From NCBI GenBank assembly GCA_019828565.1, contig JAHDYR010000038.1, positions 1,064,452-1,128,451 of the forward strand: a stretch of 64,000 nt of DNA, in the 5' to 3' direction. The notes below the pieces were generated by a model, which saw only the letters and a list, made by a program, of their open reading frames with translations, was not told the origin of the DNA and searched no databases. Below are positions 9,482 to 51,835 of the stretch, in pieces (the first letter of the stretch is position 1; every line of letters starts with the position of its first letter). The translations under genes were made by a program, and so were the position numbers. The DNA comes from Carpediemonas membranifera BICM (taxonomy: Eukaryota > Protista > Fornicata).

Positions 9482-10895
9482 TCGATGAACGCGAGGTGGT
9501 GGTTATGGGAAAGGCTCGGCGCCTCGGACGAGGTGGTCGGCTGGCTCCGTCACGGCGTACCTATCAAGCTAACAGGCACTCCCCCGCCACCCACGCCACA
9601 ACGGCGCCTGGACCCACGGCTCACCCCAAAGCTCGACGAGATGGTCCGACTTGGCGTGATCTCACCCTGTACCAGCGGGCAACTCCGGCACAGTGCCCCG
9701 CTCTTCGCGGTTGCAAAGGGCGAGCACGATGTCCGCCCGGTACACGACCTACGCGACCTCAACGCAATCACTGCGGAGACGCGGGTCTTCCGGCTCTTCG
9801 GCCTAAAACGAGCAGTGCGCAACCTCAAGCGCAACGACTTCATGCTCAAGATCGACTTAGCCTCCGGCTACCACCAGATGGGTGTGGCTCCGACCGACTC
9901 CACGCTACTGGGGATCGTCCTCCCCGAACGGGCAGGCGTACAGATACAACACACTAGGGTTCGGCTGGACCGCTGCCCCGTTCGTGTTCCAGTCTACGTC
10001 CATCCAGCTAGCAAAGATACTCGCGAACCGCTTCAACGTGACAATAGCGGTGTACCTCGACGACTTTCTCATCTCACATCGGTCACGTCGCCACCTAGCA
10101 GACGCCGCTCCCCAAATAGTCGCGCACATGAGGTCGCTGGGAGCTATCCCAGGGCTCAACAAGTGCATCCTAACTCCCACACAACGCCTGGAGTACCTAG
10201 GAGTCACCATCAACACAGCCGCCGAGACACTGCAGATTTCCAAGGACAGAGCCGATCGCTATGCAACATCAATCGAGCAGGCCCTCAGGGCCGGCAGGAT
10301 CGATGCAACCGAGTGGCAACGCCTACTAGGCCGCCTCTCGTTCTTCGCAAGTACGACACAGTTCGCCAGGCTCCAGCTCAGATCACTCCAGGCCCTACAT
10401 CCCGCCCCGACGCTTCACATCTCGCAGCAGATGCGTCGCCAGCTCAACAGCTGGCTAGCGCTGCTCAGAGATCGTCCATCCAGACCCTTCGCTCAGGCCA
10501 GGGCAGACTGGGAGATCAAGGACGAACTCCAGCTCTCGGTCGCATCCGACGCGTCCTCCTTCGCGTGGGGCGCCTGCCTATTCAACGGCGACCAGGGCCG
10601 CTCGGCTCAAGGCCGCTTTCCTCCCGAGTTCCGAGACTCTCATATCGGAGTCAAGGAGCTCTACGCGATTGGCCAGGCTATCAAGCTCACCCCAACCCAG
10701 CGCACCAGGACCCAACTAGCTATCTTTTCGGACAACACCGCGGCCATCGCATGGGTCAACCGCCAGGGCTCCCCATGTCTCGCCGACACGGCCATTCGAC
10801 TCCTGCAGGATATCTTCACCACGGCGAACACGAAGAATGTCGATATTCACTGCTTCCATATCGCAGGGCACCTCAATGTCCAGGCGGACCGGCTG
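9482..10895 (+). CDS. DIRS B reverse transcriptase-RNase H (frameshift near 9930; cut by LINE A)
   Basis: KIDLASGYHQ, LGFGW, YLDD, SDAS, KEL, SDN, HIAGHLNVQADRL. Confidence 0.9.
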
Positions 10896-11820
10896 CATAG
10901 AGGGATCTATCAGACGGCTCACCGAGATGATTGGCACGCCGGTCGGGCCAGTAGGCCGAGATGACCTCTATACCAACAACCGCCGAGCCGACGGAACCCT
11001 CAGAGACGAGAGAGAGCCCAGAAACAACGGCGTCCATCGGTGCGACAGAGAGCGCAGGGACGTCAGGCCTCATCATGAGGACAGAGAGCGCAGGGACGAC
11101 GGGCCTCGCCGCGAGGTCAGAGGACGCTGGGAAGACGGGCCTCACCATGAGGACAGAGAGCGCAGGGACGTCAGGCCTCACCATGAGGACATGGAGCGCA
11201 GAGAGGTCAGGCCTCACCACGAGGACAGAGAGCGCAGGGACGACGGGCCTCGCCGCGAGGTCAGAGGACGCTGGGAAGACGGGCCTCACCATGAGGACAG
11301 AGAGCGCAGGGACGATCAGGGCAGAGACTCCGGAGAGAGCAGACGCCGCTCACCCCCTCATGGGACCGGCAAGAGGAGTGGCAAGGACAGGGCGGTGAGC
11401 TACACAGGGGCTGGAAAGAGGGGCAAGCTCGACGGCGACGCCCGTTACGAGGCTGGAAGCAGACAGTCGAGTGACAGCGACGCGGAGAGGGACGAACTCA
11501 GGAAGGAACTTGATGAAGCCAAGAAGCTGATTCTCGCACTCAGGGCCAGGGACAGCAGGGAGGAGGAGCAGGCGACGCCAACCCCAGCACCGGCTGACAC
11601 CCAGGGAAACCAGGGTACCGGCAAGGAGCACAGGGTAGTCCGCCACAAGAAGAGGACTCGGACAAAGAGGTCTCGCAAGCCGAGACAGCTAAACCAGATG
11701 GAGCTAGTGGCCCAGATCGTGTCAACGGTGATGAAGACCATGCAGCAACAACAGGGGATGGCAACCGAGAACCAGAGCGATGATGGCAGTGACAGTGGCA
11801 ACTCAACGGAGACCGATTAA
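10896..11820 (+). CDS. LINE A ORF1 C-terminal part with R/D/E tandem repeats
   Basis: RERRDDGPRREVRGRWEDGPHHED repeats, then coiled-coil, basic and acidic tail in the same order as 50668-51444. Confidence 0.65.
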
Positions 11821-12137
11821 GCAGGGTAAAGTGGTATTCTTTGAGAGTGATAGTGACAGTTGTGAGTTCTTTTCTTTTAATCCAACCCTGGCTCCCACCC
11901 AGGGTCCGGCATTAGCTGAAATGCACTGCCGGTGGGCTGTGGCGGCAGCCAAAGGGGGGTCACGCCAATGCGCCCCCTCCTAAGTATCCCTGCCCGAAGG
12001 TAAGGATGGTCACCAGGGTAACCCATAGTTGGCCCGCCATGGGTAACCGGAGCCGGCACGAAGGCCCCGTGACGGGACAAGGGCAGATTGCAGGGAATTT
12101 CCGAAAATTCGCAGGATAGGAAAGACGGAGTACAAGA

Positions 12138-15100
12138 ATGGAAACGATCAAGATAGCGAGCCTGAACACTGAGGGACACATCGGGAAGGGAAAGGACTTC
12201 ACGGCCTCAATGGCAACGGCTATAAGGATGAAACTGAGCGACACAGATGCAGTATGCATCCAAGAAACGTGGAGGACGGCGAATACGAGGGTACACAACT
12301 TCATAGACTTCGACTACGCAATGGCAGGGAAGGAAACAGAGGAGGAGCTAGCTATGGACAACGAGAGGAGGAAGAAAGAAGCCCAAAGCCAGCGCCGAAT
12401 AGATGCCCAGCTGGGCATAGCAGGGAGCAGTAGCCGGACGCCCAGGACGAGGGGTACTAGAGAAGGAGTGGGCACAATCATCAACCCAAGAGCAAGAGGG
12501 AGCTGGGACGTAGGCATCACAGATAGCTTATCAGGGAGGATACAGGTGAGCATACTCAGAACCCATAGGGACATCCTGGTGATCAACGTGTATGGCCCAC
12601 CGGTCGGCCACGGAAGGGAGGAGAAGGACGAGTTCAGGGACGGAATAAGGAGCATTATGGAGATGAAAGGAGAGATGGAAACAATCATCATAGGGGACTG
12701 GAACCTCGACCCCAAAAGGATAGCCACAATGGCAAGATGGAAGGACCTGATCAGGGACTATAAGCTGGGAGCAGTGATCCCCATGGAAGGTACCCTCACC
12801 AAGGGAACTACCACTCCGGACTTCGCGCTGGTATCATCAGGGATCAGAGGAGCAAGGATAGAAGTACTGGATGCTAGTCGACTCGGAGTCTGGGGGTCAG
12901 CCCACAACATGATAAGACTGGAATGGAGGGAACAACGGATCCAACGGACTACAAAGAGAGAGGAAGTCCTAGACATACCGGGCGTCAGAGTGTGGAACAT
13001 GAGGAAGAAGGCTGAACGCACATCAGTCAGAAGACTGCACCGTTTTAAGAGCCTGGATGAGTGGGAGGAGGATATCAGGAAGGATATGGGCGAGCCGTCA
13101 GGTCACCCAGGCAGTGGAGACAGGGAAGAGGTCATCAAAGAAAAGGTGTGGTCGGAACTCCGGCACACACCATGGACAGAAGAGGGAAACAAGACCAGAA
13201 GTGAGATCATGAAGCGTGAGCTACAGGCCTTCTGGGGAAAACGCAGGGAAGAGTGGATCCAGGACCTCAGCCGGAGCGCGAAGGAAGGATACAAAGCATC
13301 CAGGTCCATGGTGGAAGCAGCGGTAAGAAGATGGTGGTGTGAAAACCAGTTCAAGGGCATGCCAGAGAGCATACTGAAGGACGGGAAGATTACCACCAAC
13401 AAGGAAGAAATAGGTAAGATCCTCCTACAACAGTATGCAGGAGTGAGCAGGGGCAGGGAACCGGAGTGGAAGGATAGAGGCAATGGAAAGAGGGAGGACG
13501 AATTTAAGGAGAGAGAAATACGAGAAGCGATCAGAAGGATAAAGAGGGACACTGCACCGGGACCGGACCACACTACAGGGGACATGCTCAGGGACACAGA
13601 TGACCAGGGGATCGCTCAGATAACTAGGCTCATGAACAGGGTATACAGGGAGGGCAAGATCCCGACAACATGGAAGCATGCTACAGTCTCGGCCATCCAC
13701 AAGACAGGGAAGCCCAGAGTGAAGCCGGAGTCGTACAGACCCATCTCGCTAACACCACTACTGTATAGGGTGTATGGTAGGCTCCTGAAGAGAAGATTAG
13801 AAGCAGCCACATGGCACCTCATCCCAAGAGAGCAAGCAGGGTTCCAATCGGATAAGGACGTAATACAACAGATACAATACATCGTGCAGAGACACCAGGA
13901 AGGGGGGGAGACCACGTCGATCTTCCTAGACATAGAGAAAGCCTATGACACCGTCCCGAGGGACATCCTCATGGATAAGCTGCAGGGAATGGGGGTCGAA
14001 GACCACCTCATCAGGGCAATACAGAGTACACTAGAAGAGACATGGATCTCGGTGAAGGGGGCAGGGTCATGGGAGAGAACAAACAGGGGAGTGAAGCAAG
14101 GATGTGTCCTAGCGCCGACCCTGTTCGTTTTGTTCATGGCAAACTGGCCTCACCTGGTCAGGAAGAAGCATCAGGGACAAGAGTACGATATCAGGGAACC
14201 ACCAACGGAGTTACCAAGAGCCCGGGACACGCTGCCGGCCACCCTAACCATGTTCGTGGACGATACAGCGGTCACAGGGGAGAACACCGGAAAAGAGCAA
14301 GATAGTGGCGAACCTAGTCATAGAAGTTATCAAGGAGCACCTCATGAGGGCAAATGCACAAAAGAGTGAGATGATCAGTGTAGACAGGGCAGCAGTGGCG
14401 AGAGTGGGGGAGTTACCCTAATGGCAAAAGAGGAAGCTAAGTACCTAGGTCTCTGGATAGCCAGCGGAAAAGACCCACTGGCAGCCTGTATCAGAAAGAA
14501 GCGGGAGCAGAGCGAAAGGTACAAGAAGCTAGTGAGAAGAGTGGGATGGACCAGAGGCAACATGCCGGCGCTAGCCAGCAGGCTCCTCCTCGAAGTTTAC
14601 ATATGGCCGAGGATAATGTTTGGAGTGGAGGTGTGGGGCTACGCAGCAGGGGGGAACAAGATATGGACGGATTGGCAGGGCATCATGGCCGGAACAGGCC
14701 CAGGTGGGGGCTCGGTCATGCGCATCTTGAACGGATGGATGGACCTGCAAGCCCACCTGGAGATGCTAGCAGTCAAGAGGATCGTGACAAGCAGGGGCCA
14801 GGATATACCAATCAGAGACAGGGTCTGGAAGGAGGGATCGATTATGTGGAAAGCCAGGGACTCAGTGAACGCACTCCTCAGAGGAACAAGAGAGGGAGCA
14901 ACGAATGCAGGGAAGATAGACTTTGGTAGGGAGATGGTAAGAATGAACTGGACCAGGAGGTGCAAGAGCAAGACAGCGGTGGGGCTCATGGAAGTCCTAG
15001 GACCCAAACGTATGGGAAAGTGCATGGCGGGGAAACCGGCCATAAGTAGGAAGACAGGGAAGTGGCAGTCAAGGGCAGAGTGGAAAAGGATAGTGTCGGT

Positions 15101-15564
15101 GGCAGCGAATGTCAGCCCGTCTCCATCATCAGCGGAAAGGGGAGAAGGCCCAGAGCGAGCGCTGGCGGACCTGGCGATGGGTGAGGAACTCAAACACAAG
15201 ATACAAAGGAGGTGCCCCCTGTGCACAAAGGAGAGCGAGATAGAGTTACTGTGGCAAATAGCGAGAGAGCAGCCAAACCAAGCCAGGAAGCAGGCACTAA
15301 TCAGGGAGTGGGTAAGGGGTCAGCCGCTGGGATCGGCGGCCCACATTATGTGTGAGTGCCCAGAGGTTGAAAGAGGAGATGACTGGGAAAAGATATGGAA
15401 GACAGCTAAGGAGAGGACCAGGGAATTGCAAGTCAGAAGAGGCCCGAATGGGAGGTGGTATGAGAAGAGGCCAATCTTAGAGGTGCAACAACTAGTGTTA
15501 ACAGGGTCGGAAGAGATATGGGAAGGACTGCGAGCTGGGCTGAGAGCCCTGGCAAAGGTCTATG
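12138..15564 (+). CDS. LINE A ORF2: APE endonuclease, RT and C-terminal CCHC (frameshift near 14290; last codons at 36487-36509)
   Basis: CIQETW, NVYGP, GDWN, PDFALV, SAH; YRPISL, DIEKAYD, GVKQG, FVDD; CPLC...HIMCECP. Confidence 0.93.
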
Positions 15565-17260
15565 CATACTGTCAACATCCCTAGATTATCTTTGCTAAAC
15601 CCTAGATTATCTTCGACCTCAAAAAGCTAGATAATCTACGGTTGCAAGAAAAAATGAACTCGACGATGAGCCGGAGCTGGATCTTCAAAGTGGTATGGTA
15701 GTACTTGGCTATACCTAAGCAATACGCATGCGCAGTATCAAACTTTAAATCCTGCTAGAAAAAAGTAACATAGGGACAAATTGGAATTGAGAGTTGAGAC
15801 TCAAAAAACGGGCAGGGGGGAGGAAATGGTCCATAAGTACGCCTTATGGGTCGCTTCCTCCCCTCTGCCCCTTTTTTATCGCAAAATCGATTTGCCGGAT
15901 TTGACACACGTTTGATGTGATCAAAATGGATTTGATAGACATGGGTCCAGATCATGCAGTTGGCCATCCTGAAGCGCTAGGGCGGTCTGCAGACCGCAGC
16001 AATGCCTCTGCTGAATGCCCTTCGCCTGACGGACAGGACGCGCGTTGACTCTAAAGGACTGCATGTTTCGGCATTAAAAGAAGGTGTGGAATACAACGGA
16101 GTCATCGCCGAACCGCTCCGACCAAGTCGGTTATTAGGACATCGCGTTCAGACGCCCTCTGCAATTACCAAGTCAATAGATGGGAGTCGACCTGATCAGC
16201 ACGTCATTTGGGGCCTCAGGTGACACTATAGCTGAGTTTGGCTGGGCGCTGCTGCGGCCATGGGCCGCTAGCGCGCTGATTGGCTCGTTTCTCCTCGTAT
16301 AGCTGCCGTAGAGGTCTGATCTGAGCCTCGTTCATACTGTAAGAATGGCTAGAGTCTCCCGGGAGATACTCTGGAGATACTCATGTGTCAACGCTGGTCA
16401 AACCTCGCGATCCAGGCGATCTCAGACACCTCCAGAACATCTAGAAGGTAGTTATAGAAGCATAAAAGACATGTCTGGCGTCTTGAAGTATCACATGGTG
16501 TCAGTGTTGATAAAAGAGGATAACGCATTTTATGTTGTAAATGTGAAGTGCTCGTTCGAACATGGGATCTTAACAGCGGTGTTTTATAGCTAATAGCAAT
16601 GCCCTCTGAAGTTTTCAGCCTCCAGTATCTTCTACTTCCGTATGAATTAATGATTGAATCAAGAGATTGAGAAAATGAAGACTTCCCCACAAAAACCAAA
16701 CATGGGGGGATAATCCATGGGGGTCAAGTACTATCCGTACATACTCAGGTTCTGTGGGGAAGTCTTCATTTTCTCGCATTCGAAAAATCTGCAAAATTTT
16801 ATCAACGATGAGATGGTCTTGGAAGATTGTGCTAACAACAGAGGTGTAACTAGATCAACAAAGGATCATGGAACCCTTGGTTTGTCCTAACGCCCGAAAC
16901 AGTGCCCAAAGAGCTCGTGACACAGGTGAACGCCAGAAAGAAATGAAGTTGCTCAGAGTGTACACCATATTGTCCTAGTTCCAATACTTTTTACCATTTT
17001 CTTCCAGCTGCTTTCGTTGGCGAGTTTCATTTTTTCTTACCGTTACTTCCGCAGTATCTTGCAAGATTCAGGGGGAAATTCAAATTCACTTTTCCTTTGA
17101 GGGCAAAGCAGAATTGCGCAATAACGCATCAATGGGTATGAGAAGCATAGAATACGTATAAAACTCAGTGTAGTTGCTGCTCACAACTTTTTGGAGGAAA
17201 CAGAGCAGCGGAAGCCCCAAACCAAAAATCTTTCACAAACTCTTGTGAAACTTGTGAAAT

Positions 17261-42826: not shown

Positions 42827-42899
42827 TGGTCCCTGCCAGACTCGAACTGGCATCGCAGGATTCAGAGTCCTGAGTGCTAACCACTTACACTAAGGGACC
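42827..42899 (-). tRNA. tRNA-Gln(CTG)
   Basis: GGTCCCT acceptor, D arm, CAGGA-CT-CTG-AA-TCCTG anticodon arm, GCCAG-TTCGAGT-CTGGC T arm and a downstream TTTT terminator. Confidence 0.93.
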
Positions 42900-48144: not shown

Positions 48145-50664
48145 ATGCTGGCCGACTTTTGTCCCAGGGCAGTTGGAAAAATTTCCTGCGTGCGCGAAAA
48201 ACTCACTAGACGAATGTTGGTGAAAGTACCGGAAGCTACCAGGAAACGAACACAAGACCAGTGGGAAGCTATCAGACAGGAAACCAGCGCATATCTAGCT
48301 AACAGACAGGACGGAAAGACGCTGATACTCAGGTGGAACGGCGACTTCAAGGGGAAATCCTTCGGGAAGAACTCCAAGGGCCGCGAGGAAGTAGCCCGTA
48401 ACATCAGACGCATCCTACTAGCTACCGGAGCCACTGCTATCAAGGACTCTATCACTACTCATCCCAAAGGCATCCTAGCTCTGAAGGAACTCTTCATTGT
48501 GCTAACGGAAGCCTTGGATCCCAGAGAAAAGGTAGAAACCGAGATACAACAGAGCGCCGAAGCTATCAGCATCCAAGCGGGCCACAAAAACCTCAGCAAG
48601 TGGCCGTCCGAAAGCACCATCGAGAAACTAGTCCTCAGCCCCACCACCAACTGCTATCAAACACACAACGACAGCCTCTACTGGTCCAAAGAGCGTGATA
48701 CTGTTGTTATCAGAGCACCGGACACTTTCACCATCACAGCAGGCCCCCCCGGCAAAGAACGAGCCACCACTGCTACCAGAAGAGACGTCTGGGACCCCGA
48801 AAACCCTGGCACGATCACCCAAGTGGCCCTGGAACAACAGGACGGCAGCTTCAAGGTCATCCTGGATCTCAAGGACCACGAGGCCTTCGCTATCAGTAGA
48901 TTCTCGGAGGAAGCGAGAGACGTTCTCCGACTGCAAGCACCCGAAGCGCCGGCAGCGTGGATGGCAGCCTGGAACTCCACCGGCATTCCACTGGGAGGAA
49001 GAGTCATCATCTGCAAGCCGGGTGAGGAGTCCCCTCTCGGCGAGCTACCAGCCTTCGCAGCTATCAGATCACTCATCCTCGAAGCCATGTTGAACAGTAG
49101 TGAGAAGACCTATCCCCAGGAAGATAATGCTAGCAGCAACAGCACCGACGTCGACGAGGAAGAAGAGGGCGAACAGGAACCCGACGCCCCCGAGCCCAAG
49201 CAGAAGGATAAGGTGAGCTTTGACGACCTATTCGGGGACCTGAAGCCTGTAGAGCCTCGACCCCGCGACGCCAAGCAGTCCTCCTCCACCCAGAAGCCGT
49301 TACCAGACCCGCTTGCCAGAAGCCCAGACCCCAAGGCCCACCCACGGCAGCTAGCAGACAAGGAGCCAGAGCCCAAACCCACCCTCTTACTTGCGGCCAT
49401 ATACTTCGAGTGCGGCCACTCAGGCTGTGAGAGTGAAAACGTCCCAGCAAACCCAGTGGAGGGCGGAGTCATCGTCTTCAACCCGCTAACAGGGGAGATA
49501 TCAGGGCACGGGCACGGTCTCTTCTATCAGAACATGCCGGTACAGCAGATTGACCAGGCGAGGTACGCATCATGGGCCATCTCCGGCCTGCCGCCAGCTA
49601 TCTTCGTCGATGTCGCTACTGGGATGCCCCCGGAAGAGTTCAGAACGCACTTCTCAAAGTTCACAGACTGGGCCGAACACCTTGCTATCAGACTCAGGAG
49701 GATGGAGGACGCAGGCGAGTTCAAGATCGTACTATACGCTAAGGGCGTACACATGGAGAAGTTTCTGCTCACCAACCAAGTCAACGGGCTATCAGGGGAG
49801 GTAACCACCTACTTCGCGGACAGGCTAGTCGATGAGAAGGATCTCCCAGACGCTATCAGAGACTTAGAACCCAGACTAGCGGGCGCTATCAAGGCCAGCC
49901 TCCAGGACGAGAGGACCATGGGATGGCTCAACTCCTGGAGCAGTGGGTGGCAACGCAGGAGCGAGCCAAAGGCGGTGTGCCCCTACCACAGGTATGCAGC
50001 CGGCCACTACCACTGCGGGCTGGCCGATGTTACCATCTTCACAGTCAAGACCTTGGCCATGACCCACTCCTTCCGATGCCAGCAAGACAGAGAGAGCTTC
50101 CTCGGTGATATACTGCCCAAAGCTATCAGCTCCGTCGCTCAAGCAGATCTGGAAACGGACCTCTTCGGCGGTAACAGCTTCGCTAACAGACAAGAAACCT
50201 TCGAGATCTTCAGAGGCCAACCTGGCAGAGTGAGCCTGAGAGATGGCAAAGAGGGTAACAAGATCCTAGTAGTACCGGACAGATACAGCAGATTTGGCAT
50301 GGGCTTCGGCTTCTCAGATGTGGTTAAGGGTATGAAGGGTCTGCTACTTGCGCCCGCAGCTATCAAGAGAGGGAACGTCATCGACAGGAACCCGGTGTGG
50401 TCCCTCCTCGAGCACGTCGAACCTGACGAGATGGCATGGCTCCAAGCCGAGCACGGCCTCGGAGTAGCCCCCCCTCGAGCTATCATCAAGCTATCAGACG
50501 TCTACCACTGGTGGCCCGACAAAGCCACGACAGCTCATAAGGATGGATACGGCTGCCAACTGCTAGCAGAAGACTGTGCCGAGTACGCTGAAATCATCGC
50601 GAACATCAAGGCGTACAGAGGCAGAGTCGAAGGCTTCAGAGCAGCATTCATCCCGAGAGACTAG
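48145..50664 (+). CDS. LINE B upstream ORF with a Maelstrom/arenavirus-NP-like DEDDh-fold domain (~49384-50070)
   Basis: IYFE...PVEGG...LYAKGVHMEKFL...CPYH...HCGLADV. Confidence 0.65.
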   Translation: MLADFCPRAVGKISCVREKLTRRMLVKVPEATRKRTQDQWEAIRQETSAYLANRQDGKTLILRWNGDFKGKSFGKNSKGREEVARNIRRILLATGATAIKDSITTHPKGILALKELFIVLTEALDPREKVETEIQQSAEAISIQAGHKNLSKWPSESTIEKLVLSPTTNCYQTHNDSLYWSKERDTVVIRAPDTFTITAGPPGKERATTATRRDVWDPENPGTITQVALEQQDGSFKVILDLKDHEAFAISRFSEEARDVLRLQAPEAPAAWMAAWNSTGIPLGGRVIICKPGEESPLGELPAFAAIRSLILEAMLNSSEKTYPQEDNASSNSTDVDEEEEGEQEPDAPEPKQKDKVSFDDLFGDLKPVEPRPRDAKQSSSTQKPLPDPLARSPDPKAHPRQLADKEPEPKPTLLLAAIYFECGHSGCESENVPANPVEGGVIVFNPLTGEISGHGHGLFYQNMPVQQIDQARYASWAISGLPPAIFVDVATGMPPEEFRTHFSKFTDWAEHLAIRLRRMEDAGEFKIVLYAKGVHMEKFLLTNQVNGLSGEVTTYFADRLVDEKDLPDAIRDLEPRLAGAIKASLQDERTMGWLNSWSSGWQRRSEPKAVCPYHRYAAGHYHCGLADVTIFTVKTLAMTHSFRCQQDRESFLGDILPKAISSVAQADLETDLFGGNSFANRQETFEIFRGQPGRVSLRDGKEGNKILVVPDRYSRFGMGFGFSDVVKGMKGLLLAPAAIKRGNVIDRNPVWSLLEHVEPDEMAWLQAEHGLGVAPPRAIIKLSDVYHWWPDKATTAHKDGYGCQLLAEDCAEYAEIIANIKAYRGRVEGFRAAFIPRD

Positions 50665-50667
50665 GGC

Positions 50668-51444
50668 GTGGTGAGAGTCCGTGAGGCTGCCACAACGCTC
50701 CGCCGCATGGCCAGAGACAAGACGACCGACAGACTCACCCCAAACCCGATCCCAGAAGAGAAGCCAGTCAGATTCATGGGTAGATCCCCGCCCCACTACG
50801 TCCCAAAGGACCAGAACCCCGAAGAAGCCCCCTACGTCCTAAGGTACGCCGACACAGGGATGCCCGAGAAGCTCGAAGCTATCAGAAGACGGTTTGTCGG
50901 CACCACGACTGACCAAGGTCCCAGGCCGCCCCACAGACCATCTCCCAGACCCTCACAGAGAAGAGATTACAGAGGCGCAGATAACTTCAGAGGCCGTGAC
51001 AGCTGGATTGACCAGCGCACGCCACCCACGTCCCCTTTCGGCAAGAGCAGAAGCCAGCAAGACAACTATCAGTGCAGAGAGACACCCCTCTCCTCCAACT
51101 ACTCCAGCGGCACGTACAAGAGGAACTCCCTCTACAGAGGCTCACCATACGCATGGGAGAACAAGCGGCGGGCAGACGACCACTCAACGGGCACTGAGAG
51201 AAGCAGACTATCGGGGCCCCGCGAGGATGAGACTACCAAGATGCTCCAGACCCAACTAACAAGAGCCCTCAGAGAGATCGACGAACTCAAGCAACGCATC
51301 GAACAAGACCGCACCTCAGACCTCAGACGCTCAGGCAAGCCCAAGAGCAAGAAGAACAAGAGGATCAAGAAGCTGATCAAGCTACTGGACTCAGAGGACA
51401 GCGATGAGGATGTGGAGGACAAGGAGGAGGACTGTGTGGGGTAA
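50668..51444 (+). CDS. LINE B ORF1 C-terminal part (in frame after a TAG)
   Basis: R/S/P-rich, then coiled-coil, basic and acidic tail as in LINE A ORF1. Confidence 0.6.
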   Translation: MVRVREAATTLRRMARDKTTDRLTPNPIPEEKPVRFMGRSPPHYVPKDQNPEEAPYVLRYADTGMPEKLEAIRRRFVGTTTDQGPRPPHRPSPRPSQRRDYRGADNFRGRDSWIDQRTPPTSPFGKSRSQQDNYQCRETPLSSNYSSGTYKRNSLYRGSPYAWENKRRADDHSTGTERSRLSGPREDETTKMLQTQLTRALREIDELKQRIEQDRTSDLRRSGKPKSKKNKRIKKLIKLLDSEDSDEDVEDKEEDCVG

Positions 51445-51835
51445 GCAGGTAAACAGATTCTTCTTCAACAACAGAAAATTATCAGATTCTTTTACAAACA
51501 CAATCCTGGCTCCCACCCAGGACCTGGCATTAGCCAAGAAGGGCACTGCCAGTGGGCTGCAGCGACAGCCAAAGGGGGGGTCACGCCAAAGCGCCCCCTC
51601 CTAAGTCAATTGCCAGAGAACTCAATGGTCACCAGAGCACAAGAAGTTGGCCTAACGGGGATCACCTGAGCCGGCACTGAGGCCCCCGTTAGGACGCGGC
51701 TATCAGAAATTCTAGGAAATTCGCAGGATAAGAACCAAGCAGAATCAACATGGAAAGAACTAGTATAATCAGTCTCAACTCTCAAGGTCACATTGGGAAA
51801 GGGAAGGACTTTACTGCATCCATCGCCACAGCACT

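What the first reader, a model, noticed from the sequence alone, without database searches (positions are those of the whole stretch)
11886..12120. Covarying pseudoknotted RNA between ORF1 and ORF2 of both LINEs (second copy 51504-51730)
Seen: stem CCCTGG/CCAGGG vs TCCTGG/CCAGGA around an invariant CTCCCAC loop, and stem CCGGCA/TGCCGG vs CTGGCA/TGCCAG. A downstream GTGGG can pair with the loop CCCAC. There are GGCTG/CAGCC and GGGGG/CCCCC stems, and CCCGCCATGGG/CCCGTGACGGG vs CCTAACGGGG/CCCCGTTAGG. The flanking ORF1 sequence is barely alignable. Inference: an IRES-like element for ORF2 translation, or a self-cleaving ribozyme.
Basis: partly seen in the sequence, partly recalled or inferred. Interest (0 to 1): 0.8.

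Follow-up and report, generated by a model that had tools for sequence, protein, structure and literature searches.

The report
Conserved folded RNA between LINE genes
The LINE retrotransposons of the protist Carpediemonas membranifera carry a conserved, covarying folded RNA of about 200-240 nt between their two genes; it matches no known RNA family and most likely lets ribosomes start the second gene independently, but this is untested.

Summary
Both window copies (11886-12120 and 51504-51730, + strand) carry the same multi-helix RNA between the ORF1 stop and the ORF2 AUG of APE/RT LINEs.

A covariance model built from it finds 108 copies in the 24.2-Mb genome, which is Carpediemonas membranifera. 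They fall into at least four or five LINE families.

- **Structure:** in 47 modelled pairs, 97% of cells pair. Nine to twelve pairs show compensatory changes, against 0-2 when partners are slid. The G·U pairs fit only the mRNA strand.
- **Conservation:** the 5' domain is 84-94% identical between families. ORF2 third codon positions are 42-52% identical and ORF1 proteins 30-39%.
not supported. It overlaps H2 and H3, and it has a C·A mismatch in the most abundant family.
- **Known families:** there is no Rfam match, no HDV-like fold and no hammerhead core. No relatives turned up in metagenomes.
- **Function:** it could not be tested, because no RNA run was listed. My best reading (about 0.4) is an IRES-like ribosome-landing element for ORF2. 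The grounds are upstream AUGs in the spacer, a variable ORF1/ORF2 frame, and a conserved motif 17-19 nt before the AUG in a purine-rich tract. A ribozyme is possible but has no support.

First readers of this scan noted the same element on other pieces of this genome.

The parts
10895..11820 (+). ORF1 of LINE copy A. This copy is slightly 5'-truncated. The stop TAA is at 11818-11820, and the ORF contains a variable 144-bp internal repeat.
   Evidence: ORF1 proteins of families A, B, C and D1 are 30-39% identical.
11825..11842 (+). Conserved post-stop motif GGTAAAG..GTATTCTTT. A recurrent breakpoint lies at GTATTCTTT (11834-11842).
   Evidence: Loci L008, L057 and L032 all change partner exactly here.
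11886..11904 (+). H1: a 6-bp stem with the invariant 7-nt loop CTCCCAC.
   Evidence: Pair 7-25 is C-G in most families and U-A in family B.
11906..11932 (+). H2: a 6-bp stem plus an inner GC/GC pair, with conserved internal loops TTA and AC.
   Evidence: Pair 28-54 is C-G in families A and C and U-A in B and D.
11935..11950 (+). H3: GGCTG/CAGCC, a 5-bp stem with a 6-nt loop.
   Evidence: The stem is invariant apart from one C-G to U-G change.
11954..11978 (+). H4: the G-run/C-run stem with a TCA bulge and an inner CGC/GCG stem. The G-run length varies (6 or 7).
   Evidence: There is an invariant G·U pair, and one pair is G-C or G-U.
11979..12015 (+). Junction CCTAAGT (invariant), then a variable stretch holding an invariant TGCC, then an invariant GGTCACCA (12008-12015). 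No hairpin here is conserved across families.
12029..12080 (+). H6: a long, interrupted helix. It consists of TTG/CAA, CCCGCCATGGG/CCCGTGACGGG, CC/GG and a 2-bp cap. The apical loop CCGGCA (12053-12058) is invariant.
   Evidence: Helix groups 7 and 8 have 7-8 pairs with compensatory changes.
12096..12120 (+). H7: a small A/U hairpin (AATTT/AAATT), followed by the conserved motif TTCGCAGGATAGG. The motif contains a stop that is in frame with ORF2.
   Evidence: The fifth pair is U-A in family A and C-G in C and D. The motif-to-ATG spacing is 17-19 nt.
12121..12137 (+). Purine-rich leader with almost no U, immediately upstream of the ORF2 AUG.
   Evidence: In all families 19-22 of the 28 nt are purines.
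12138..15584 (+). ORF2 of copy A, with a weak APE endonuclease match and a reverse transcriptase domain. One in-frame stop lies at 14367-14369.
   Evidence: (RVT_1 E = 4e-27; Exo_endo_phos E = 0.008).
51504..51697 (+). Copy B of the element (H1-H6): H1 51504-22, H2 51524-52, H3 51555-70, H4 51574-99, H6 51647-97, loop CCGGCA 51671-76.
   Evidence: and (model R1, 194 bits).
51710..51752 (+). Copy B: the A/U hairpin, the motif TTCGCAGGATAAG (51720-32), the purine-rich leader and the ORF2 ATG (51750). This copy's resemblance to other LINE copies ends at about 51835.

Best explanation
The element is a cis-acting structured RNA in the bicistronic LINE transcript. It lets ribosomes start ORF2 independently of ORF1. 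In other words it is an IRES-like recruiting or landing platform, or alternatively a structure that ribosomes shunt across.

Shown here:
- It is a compact fold of at least six helices (H1-H4, H6, H7) with invariant loops and junctions. Compensatory changes maintain it in at least 4-5 LINE families and about 108 copies, on the mRNA strand.

Inferred, not shown:
- The folded domain binds a ribosomal subunit or an initiation factor.
- The conserved TTCGCAGGATAAGG motif and the unstructured purine-rich tract place the AUG, 17-19 nt downstream, in the decoding site.
For: - **Position.** The element fills the roughly 317-nt spacer between the ORF1 stop and the ORF2 AUG in every family.
- **Structure.** It is selected at the RNA level: 97% of cells pair, 9-12 pairs are compensatory against 0-2 in slid controls, and the G·U pairs fit only the + strand.
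- **Sequence constraint.** The 5' domain is 84-94% identical between families, against 42-52% at ORF2 third codon positions and 30-39% for ORF1 proteins.
- **Scanning or reinitiation is unlikely.** The spacer holds 1-4 upstream ATGs. ORF1 is more than 270 codons long, and about 317 nt lie between its stop and the ORF2 AUG.
- **No ORF1-ORF2 fusion.** The relative frame of ORF1 and ORF2 differs even among copies of family C, and stops lie between them.
- **Fixed downstream geometry.** A conserved motif lies 17-19 nt from the AUG, followed by a purine-rich leader with almost no U. An in-frame stop inside the motif means translation starts at that AUG.
- **No spliced copies.** None of the A-family matches lacks the spacer.
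- **Context.** How ORF2 initiates in non-LTR elements is an acknowledged open question, and intergenic IRESs have been proposed for them (PMC3894237).
Against: - There are no functional data of any kind, and no RNA run was listed.
- No similarity was found to any IRES family in Rfam.
- The tertiary contacts or pseudoknots typical of compact IRESs are not demonstrated.
- Position upstream of an ORF fits other roles equally well, such as protein binding or RNA processing.
- Recombination between families occurs (chimera L019). It could inflate the apparent sequence conservation, though it would not produce the compensatory changes.
- A recurrent breakpoint at GTATTCTTT hints at a discrete RNA end upstream of the element. 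That would suit a processed or separately started ORF2 RNA.
Confidence: 0.4

Rival explanations
1. It is a protein-binding scaffold. The fold is the high-affinity site where the element's own ORF1p and/or ORF2p, or a host factor, nucleates the LINE ribonucleoprotein. This would give cis-preference, packaging or regulation of reverse transcription. It would not act in translation.
For: The invariant loops and junctions (CTCCCAC, CCTAAGT, GGTCACCA, CCGGCA) sit in a covarying scaffold, which is typical of protein-recognition RNAs. Conservation extends across families whose ORF2 N-termini are 60-75% identical. From memory, the conserved 5' pseudoknot of R2 was first read as a protein-binding motif.
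Against: ORF1 evolves fast (30-39% identity) while the RNA stays nearly invariant, which fits poorly with co-evolution with ORF1p. The fixed spacing to the AUG and the purine-rich leader are not explained. From general knowledge, LINE reverse transcriptases usually recognise the 3' end; a separate 3' hairpin exists at 15603-15638.
Confidence: 0.2
2. It is an RNA-processing element that separates an ORF1 RNA from an ORF2 RNA. It could be a new self-cleaving ribozyme, an exonuclease-stalling structure, or a structure acting with a 3'-end processing site just after ORF1.
For: Three independent copies from three families change upstream partner exactly at GTATTCTTT (L008, L057, L032). This site is about 55 nt upstream of H1 and 6-9 nt downstream of the conserved GGTAAAG. 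Other truncations of family C are scattered 723-1407 nt upstream. GTAAA resembles the Giardia AGTRAAY polyadenylation signal cited in PMC1805757. L033 starts 11 nt before H1. There is precedent in the HDV-like ribozymes at the 5' ends of R2, RTE and L1Tc (PMC5814959, listed, and my own knowledge).
Against: No ribozyme family in Rfam matches, even at E <= 10. No conserved HDV-like nested fold and no hammerhead core were found. Of 54 family-C copies, 53 keep ORF1 joined to the spacer, so cleaved RNAs are at most rare templates. The stretch between the breakpoint and H1 is poorly conserved. The breakpoint statistic is post hoc.
Confidence: 0.2
3. It is a spliceosomal intron. GGTAAAG after the ORF1 stop would be the 5' splice site and TTCGCAG|G the 3' splice site. 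Splicing would bring the ORF2 AUG close to the ORF1 stop.
For: GT...AG-like motifs are conserved at both ends of the spacer in most families.
Against: Family D1 has ATAAAG at that position. No spacer-less retrocopies were found among the A-family matches. Splicing at the stop-overlapping GTAAG would not put ORF1 in frame with the ORF2 AUG (worked out from the sequences). An intron does not need 200 nt of covarying structure.
Confidence: 0.04
4. It has no function of its own. The similarity would be kept by recent recombination or gene conversion between LINE families, and the pairing would be incidental in GC-rich sequence.
For: Chimeric copies exist (L019 = A 5' half + C 3' half; L018 and L027). 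The folding energy of copy A is no better than that of shuffled sequence.
Against: Conversion does not explain the 9-12 compensatory pairs with near-zero slid controls. There are also G-C/G-U polymorphisms that keep pairing within family C. The flanking sequence on both sides has diverged much further.
Confidence: 0.05

Closest known systems
Dicistroviridae intergenic-region (IGR) IRES
   Same: It lies between two ORFs on one RNA. It is a compact domain of about 190-200 nt with several helices and conserved loops.
   Different: Rfam's IRES models give no match. Here ORF2 starts at an AUG 45-80 nt downstream of the last long helix, with an in-frame stop in between, not at a non-AUG codon abutting a tRNA-mimic pseudoknot. 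No pseudoknot is demonstrated.
LINE-1 ORF2 initiation (mouse L1 inter-ORF IRES; human L1 unconventional reinitiation) and SART1 UAAUG coupling with a downstream structure
   Same: The biological problem is the same: translating ORF2 from a bicistronic non-LTR RNA (PMC3894237).
   Different: From my knowledge and the review, those spacers are short or absent and are not known to hold a covarying multi-helix fold. Here the spacer is about 317 nt and structurally conserved across families.
HDV-like self-cleaving ribozymes of R2, RTE and L1Tc
   Same: They are conserved structured RNAs inside non-LTR retrotransposons that link RNA processing with translation initiation.
   Different: Those sit at the element's 5' end and have a nested double pseudoknot of roughly 70-170 nt. 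Here the element lies between the ORFs. My descriptor found no conserved P1-P2-P3-P1.1 arrangement and there is no Rfam hit.
Calicivirus TURBS (termination-reinitiation)
   Same: It is an RNA element that lets a ribosome translate a downstream ORF after a long upstream ORF.
   Different: From memory, TURBS works when stop and restart codons overlap or lie within a few nucleotides, and it sits upstream of the stop. Here the gap is about 317 nt and contains AUGs.

Membership tests
Any Rfam 15 family (4227 models, including IRES, HDV-like, hammerhead, twister, pistol, hatchet, GIR1 and SRP) | Score at or above the family's gathering threshold, or at least a credible sub-threshold match | tested here: not met
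   The gathering scan of the whole window found only one tRNA, at 42827-42899. The E <= 10 scans of the A, B and C copies gave nothing, or only structure-less lncRNA models on the opposite strand at 16-17 bits.
HDV-like ribozyme | Nested double pseudoknot: P1 (6-7 bp) starting at the cleavage site, a P3 hairpin (3 bp) followed directly by the P1 3' strand, and P2 closing after P4 | tested here: not met
   My own descriptor scan, from 200 nt upstream to 420 nt downstream of H1 in five families, found no candidate at a shared position in 4 or more families, and none at all in family A. The descriptor is strict and written from memory, so this result is not exhaustive.
HDV-like ribozyme | Self-cleavage in vitro, leaving a 5'-OH product that starts at P1 | not testable with these tools
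   No RNA data were available.
Hammerhead ribozyme | Conserved core CUGANGA ... GAAA at a three-way junction | tested here: not met
   CUGANGA is absent from both strands of the spacer in all five families.
IGR-type (dicistrovirus-like) IRES | Initiation at a non-AUG codon directly 3' of a tRNA-mimicking pseudoknot, so that the ORF is open up to the structure | tested here: not met
   An in-frame stop lies 18 nt (families A, B, C) or 6 nt (D1) upstream of the AUG; only D2 is open for 69 nt.
IRES in the functional sense | Cap- and upstream-ORF-independent second-cistron translation in a controlled bicistronic assay | not testable with these tools
   This needs experiments.
Conserved structured RNA (general criterion) | Base pairs maintained by compensatory substitutions beyond what controls give | tested here: met
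   9-12 pairs with changes on both sides, 97% of cells paired, slid controls 0-2 pairs, and 0 of 500 shuffles reaching the observed values. There are only about 5 independent lineages, so no R-scape-grade statistic is possible.

The most novel reading that the evidence does not exclude
The element is a new class of autonomous catalytic or ribosome-binding RNA carried by a retrotransposon. It would be either a factor-independent IRES that captures metamonad ribosomes directly, or a new self-cleaving or processing ribozyme that releases an ORF2 RNA beginning near GTATTCTTT.
Probability: 0.12. Interest if true: 0.88.

Novelty: new variant of a known kind. Interest (0 to 1): 0.62.

Why it matters
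How the second ORF of bicistronic LINEs gets translated is a long-standing open question (PMC3894237). No LINE is known to carry a phylogenetically supported, compact structured RNA in its inter-ORF spacer.

This element has about 108 copies and several diverged, apparently recently active families. That gives a ready-made set of natural compensatory mutants for reporter, ribosome-binding, cleavage and structure-probing experiments.

The host is a free-living metamonad, a lineage whose better-studied members have unusually short untranslated regions and whose translation initiation is poorly understood. If the element turns out to be an IRES or a ribozyme, it would be a new RNA family.

Tried and rejected
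- **Rfam.** Gathering and E <= 10 modes on three families gave only noise.
Rejected as unsupported, for two reasons: it overlaps H2 and H3, and it has a C·A mismatch in family C.
- **HDV-like fold and hammerhead core.** Not found.
- **Coding potential of the spacer.** One frame is open through H1-H4. It is broken by the 2-nt insertion in family B and by G-run length variation, and the substitution pattern is stem-compensating, so this was rejected.
- **ORF1-ORF2 fusion by readthrough, frameshift or splicing.** Rejected. There are stops in between, the relative frame varies, and there are no spacer-less copies.
- **A conserved local hairpin between H4 and H6 ("H5").** It folds only in family A and weakly in D, so I dropped it from the model.
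- **Systematic search for tertiary pairings**. It gave many candidates in this GC-rich RNA, and none has clean covariation. The notable ones are UGCC with the loop GGCA, UUAG with CUAA, GGUCA with UGGCC, and UGGGCUG with UGGCCCG.
- **RNA-seq evidence.** No run was listed.
- **Relatives outside the genome.** A DNA pattern scan and an ORF2-profile scan of metagenome contigs both came back empty. The protein word search found only C. membranifera proteins above 30% identity.
- **Lower-scoring model hits.** I did not try to get that DNA through another tool.

Full report
**What is there**

The similarity starts abruptly just upstream of the first hairpin and runs into the ORF2 start.

Both lie on the + strand, between the stop of an ORF1 and the ATG of an ORF2. 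The ORF1s are 10837/10895-11820 and 50668-51444, and neither has a Pfam domain. The copy-A ORF2 carries a reverse transcriptase domain (RVT_1, E = 4e-27) and a weak APE-type endonuclease match.

The best ORF2 relatives are Carpediemonas membranifera proteins (J8273_...). Everything else is at most 30% identical. The assembly has 24,237,836 bases in 69 contigs, which matches the published C. membranifera genome (24.2 Mb, 69 contigs; PMC8516963).

**How widespread it is**

DNA searches of the window's own genome gave more than 100 candidates. A covariance model of the core (R1: 202 positions, 47 pairs) finds 108 matches in the genome. It finds exactly the two expected sites in the window.

The copies fall into these groups:

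| Family | Notes |
|---|---|
| A | the window's first copy; about 17 near-identical copies |
| B | the window's second copy; 3-4 copies |
| C | at least 54 copies that are 99-100% alike, so probably recently active |
| D1, D2 | two related sub-families |
| recombinants | L019 = A 5' half + C 3' half; L018 and L027 |

ORF1 proteins of A, B, C and D1 are homologous but only 30-39% identical. ORF2 N-termini are 60-75% identical. Between families, ORF2 third codon positions are 42-52% identical. The 5' domain of the RNA (H1 to CCTAAGT) is 84-94% identical and the 3' domain 69-80%.

**Structure**

RNAalifold and manual refinement give the following (copy A coordinates).

| Feature | Position | Description |
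|---|---|---|
| H1 | 11886-11904 | 6 bp; loop CTCCCAC invariant in all full copies |
| H2 | 11906-11932 | 6 bp plus 2 inner bp |
| H3 | 11935-11950 | 5 bp |
| H4 | 11954-11978 | G-run/C-run stem with an inner CGC/GCG stem |
| junction | 11979-11985 | invariant CCTAAGT |
| variable stretch | 11986-12007 | contains an invariant TGCC |
| junction | 12008-12015 | invariant GGTCACCA |
| H6 | 12029-12080 | long, interrupted helix capped by the invariant hexaloop CCGGCA |
| H7 | 12096-12109 | small A/U hairpin |
| motif | 12108-12120 | TTCGCAGGATA(A/G)G |
| ORF2 ATG | 12138 | |

On 11 sequences, 97.3% of pair cells are standard pairs and 9 of 47 pairs show changes on both sides. No shuffle out of 500 reaches these values. 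Sliding the 3' partners by 1-3 columns drops pairing to 38-49% and compensatory pairs to 0-1. On 32 distinct sequences fitted to the model there are 12 compensatory pairs.

Most covariation is in H6, where 7-8 pairs change. H1, H2 and H7 have one covarying pair each. H3 and H4 are essentially invariant, so they are neither supported nor contradicted by covariation.

Several pairs are G·U, or alternate between G-C and G-U (78-103, 83-97, 161-198, 165-194). They would be C·A on the opposite strand, so the folded molecule is the LINE sense RNA.

Thermodynamic stability alone is unremarkable in this GC-rich context: z = -0.04 for copy A and -2.2 for copy B.

**The pseudoknot**

In family C, the most prolific family, it reads GTAGG, which puts an uncompensated C·A in the middle. 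I therefore treat it as unsupported, though not excluded.

A systematic scan for other long-range pairings gave several candidates between invariant segments:
- TGCC with the loop GGCA;
- TTAG in the H2 internal loop with CTAA in the junction;
- GGTCA with TGGCC;
- a 7-bp alternative, UGGGCUG/UGGCCCG, in which the family-C G-to-A change is matched by C-to-U.

None has clean covariation. No hairpin between H4 and H6 is conserved across families.

**What it is not**

- It matches no Rfam family at gathering thresholds. At E <= 10 the three families give nothing, or only structure-less lncRNA models on the wrong strand.
- My HDV-like descriptor finds nothing conserved.
- There is no hammerhead core.
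- It is not coding. One frame is open through H1-H4, but indels break it (a 2-nt insertion in B, and 6 versus 7 Gs).
- ORF1 and ORF2 are not fused by recoding. Their relative frame differs even within family C, and stops intervene.
- Splicing is unlikely. None of the A-family matches lacks the spacer; the two short ones are ordinary truncations inside ORF2. One sub-family also lacks the GT.

**Clues to function**

- The spacer is about 317 nt long and holds 1-4 ATGs before the ORF2 ATG.
- ORF1 is long. By the criteria summarised in PMC3894237, reinitiation or scanning after such an ORF is improbable. That review states that ORF2 initiation is unresolved and that intergenic IRESs might exist in non-LTR elements.
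- Downstream of the fold, all families keep the motif TTCGCAGGATA(A/G)G at 17-19 nt from the ATG. A purine-rich leader with almost no U follows it.
- In A, B and C the motif holds a stop in frame with ORF2, so translation starts at that ATG.

This anatomy is a structured domain, then a conserved motif, then an unstructured leader at fixed distance, then the AUG. It is what one expects of an internal ribosome-landing element, and that is my preferred reading at about 0.4.

**A second, unexplained clue**

Three copies from three families change their upstream partner exactly at GTATTCTTT (11834-11842). This site is 6-9 nt after a conserved GGTAAAG and about 55 nt before H1.

- L008 joins an A-type spacer and ORF2 to a different open reading frame, related to window 49738-49797.
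- L057 is the only one of 54 family-C copies without ORF1 upstream.
- L032 is a family-B copy with a 504-bp internal deletion that ends there, with 2-nt microhomology.

Other 5' truncations are scattered.

This suggests a discrete RNA end, or a hot spot for template switching. It could be a 3'-end processing site for an ORF1-only mRNA, since GTAAA resembles the Giardia AGTRAAY signal cited in PMC1805757. It could also be an internal start or a cleavage site. It keeps the processing and ribozyme rival alive at about 0.2. However, 53 of 54 family-C copies retain ORF1, so such RNAs are at most rare templates.

**Limits**

- No RNA run was listed for this sequence, so expression, RNA ends and splicing could not be examined, and read laying was not used.
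About ten lower-scoring model hits, which might be diverged families or a cellular source of the fold, could not be read. I did not try to obtain them through another tool.
- Two metagenome scans and the protein word search found no relatives outside this genome.
- The comparative evidence therefore rests on about five lineages that also recombine.

**Verdict**

The element is a real, strongly constrained, structured RNA of the LINE sense transcript, and it is not in Rfam. Its function is unknown. An ORF2 translation element is the best-supported reading. A protein-binding scaffold and an RNA-processing element are serious rivals.

First readers of this scan noted the same element independently on other pieces of this genome. 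None of those notes carried a follow-up.

Noticed in passing
window 11834-11842; L008:~1474, L057, L032: Recurrent breakpoint at GTATTCTTT in three LINE families. Upstream of it, L008 carries a long open frame related to window 49738-49797 instead of the usual ORF1.
   Followed up: partly
window 48145-51444: Upstream of copy B, an 839-aa ORF with no Pfam domain runs in the same frame as the 258-aa ORF1-like ORF. A single stop at 50665-50667 separates them. L032 lacks 50955-51458. The long ORF may be an extra 5' module of some of these LINEs.
   Followed up: no
window 11044-11320: About 132-144-bp tandem repeat inside ORF1 of family A. Its copy number differs between genomic copies.
   Followed up: no
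window 15569-15638: At the 3' end of LINE copy A there is a direct repeat CCCTAGATTATCTT (x2) and a 10-bp inverted repeat TAGATTATCT/AGATAATCTA, which forms a 3' hairpin. No poly(A) tail is evident.
   Followed up: no
window 14367-14369: Copy A's ORF2 has one in-frame stop that splits it into 743-aa and roughly 400-aa parts. Copy B's resemblance to other LINE copies ends at about 51835.
   Followed up: no
L018:1508-1710(-), L027:1417-1615(+): These copies have the A-type element, or only its 3' half (L027), followed by unrelated sequence instead of the ORF2 start. L018 has a 194-aa ORF downstream. L027 has a different 5' half containing its own GGCG...CGCC hairpin.
   Followed up: partly
L071, L088 (G000:C30): Family-C copies in which the element is interrupted after GGTCACCAGGT by an (AAAG/GAAA)n-rich insertion.
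   Followed up: no
window 42827-42899 (-): A tRNA gene, the only Rfam gathering-level hit in the window.
   Followed up: no
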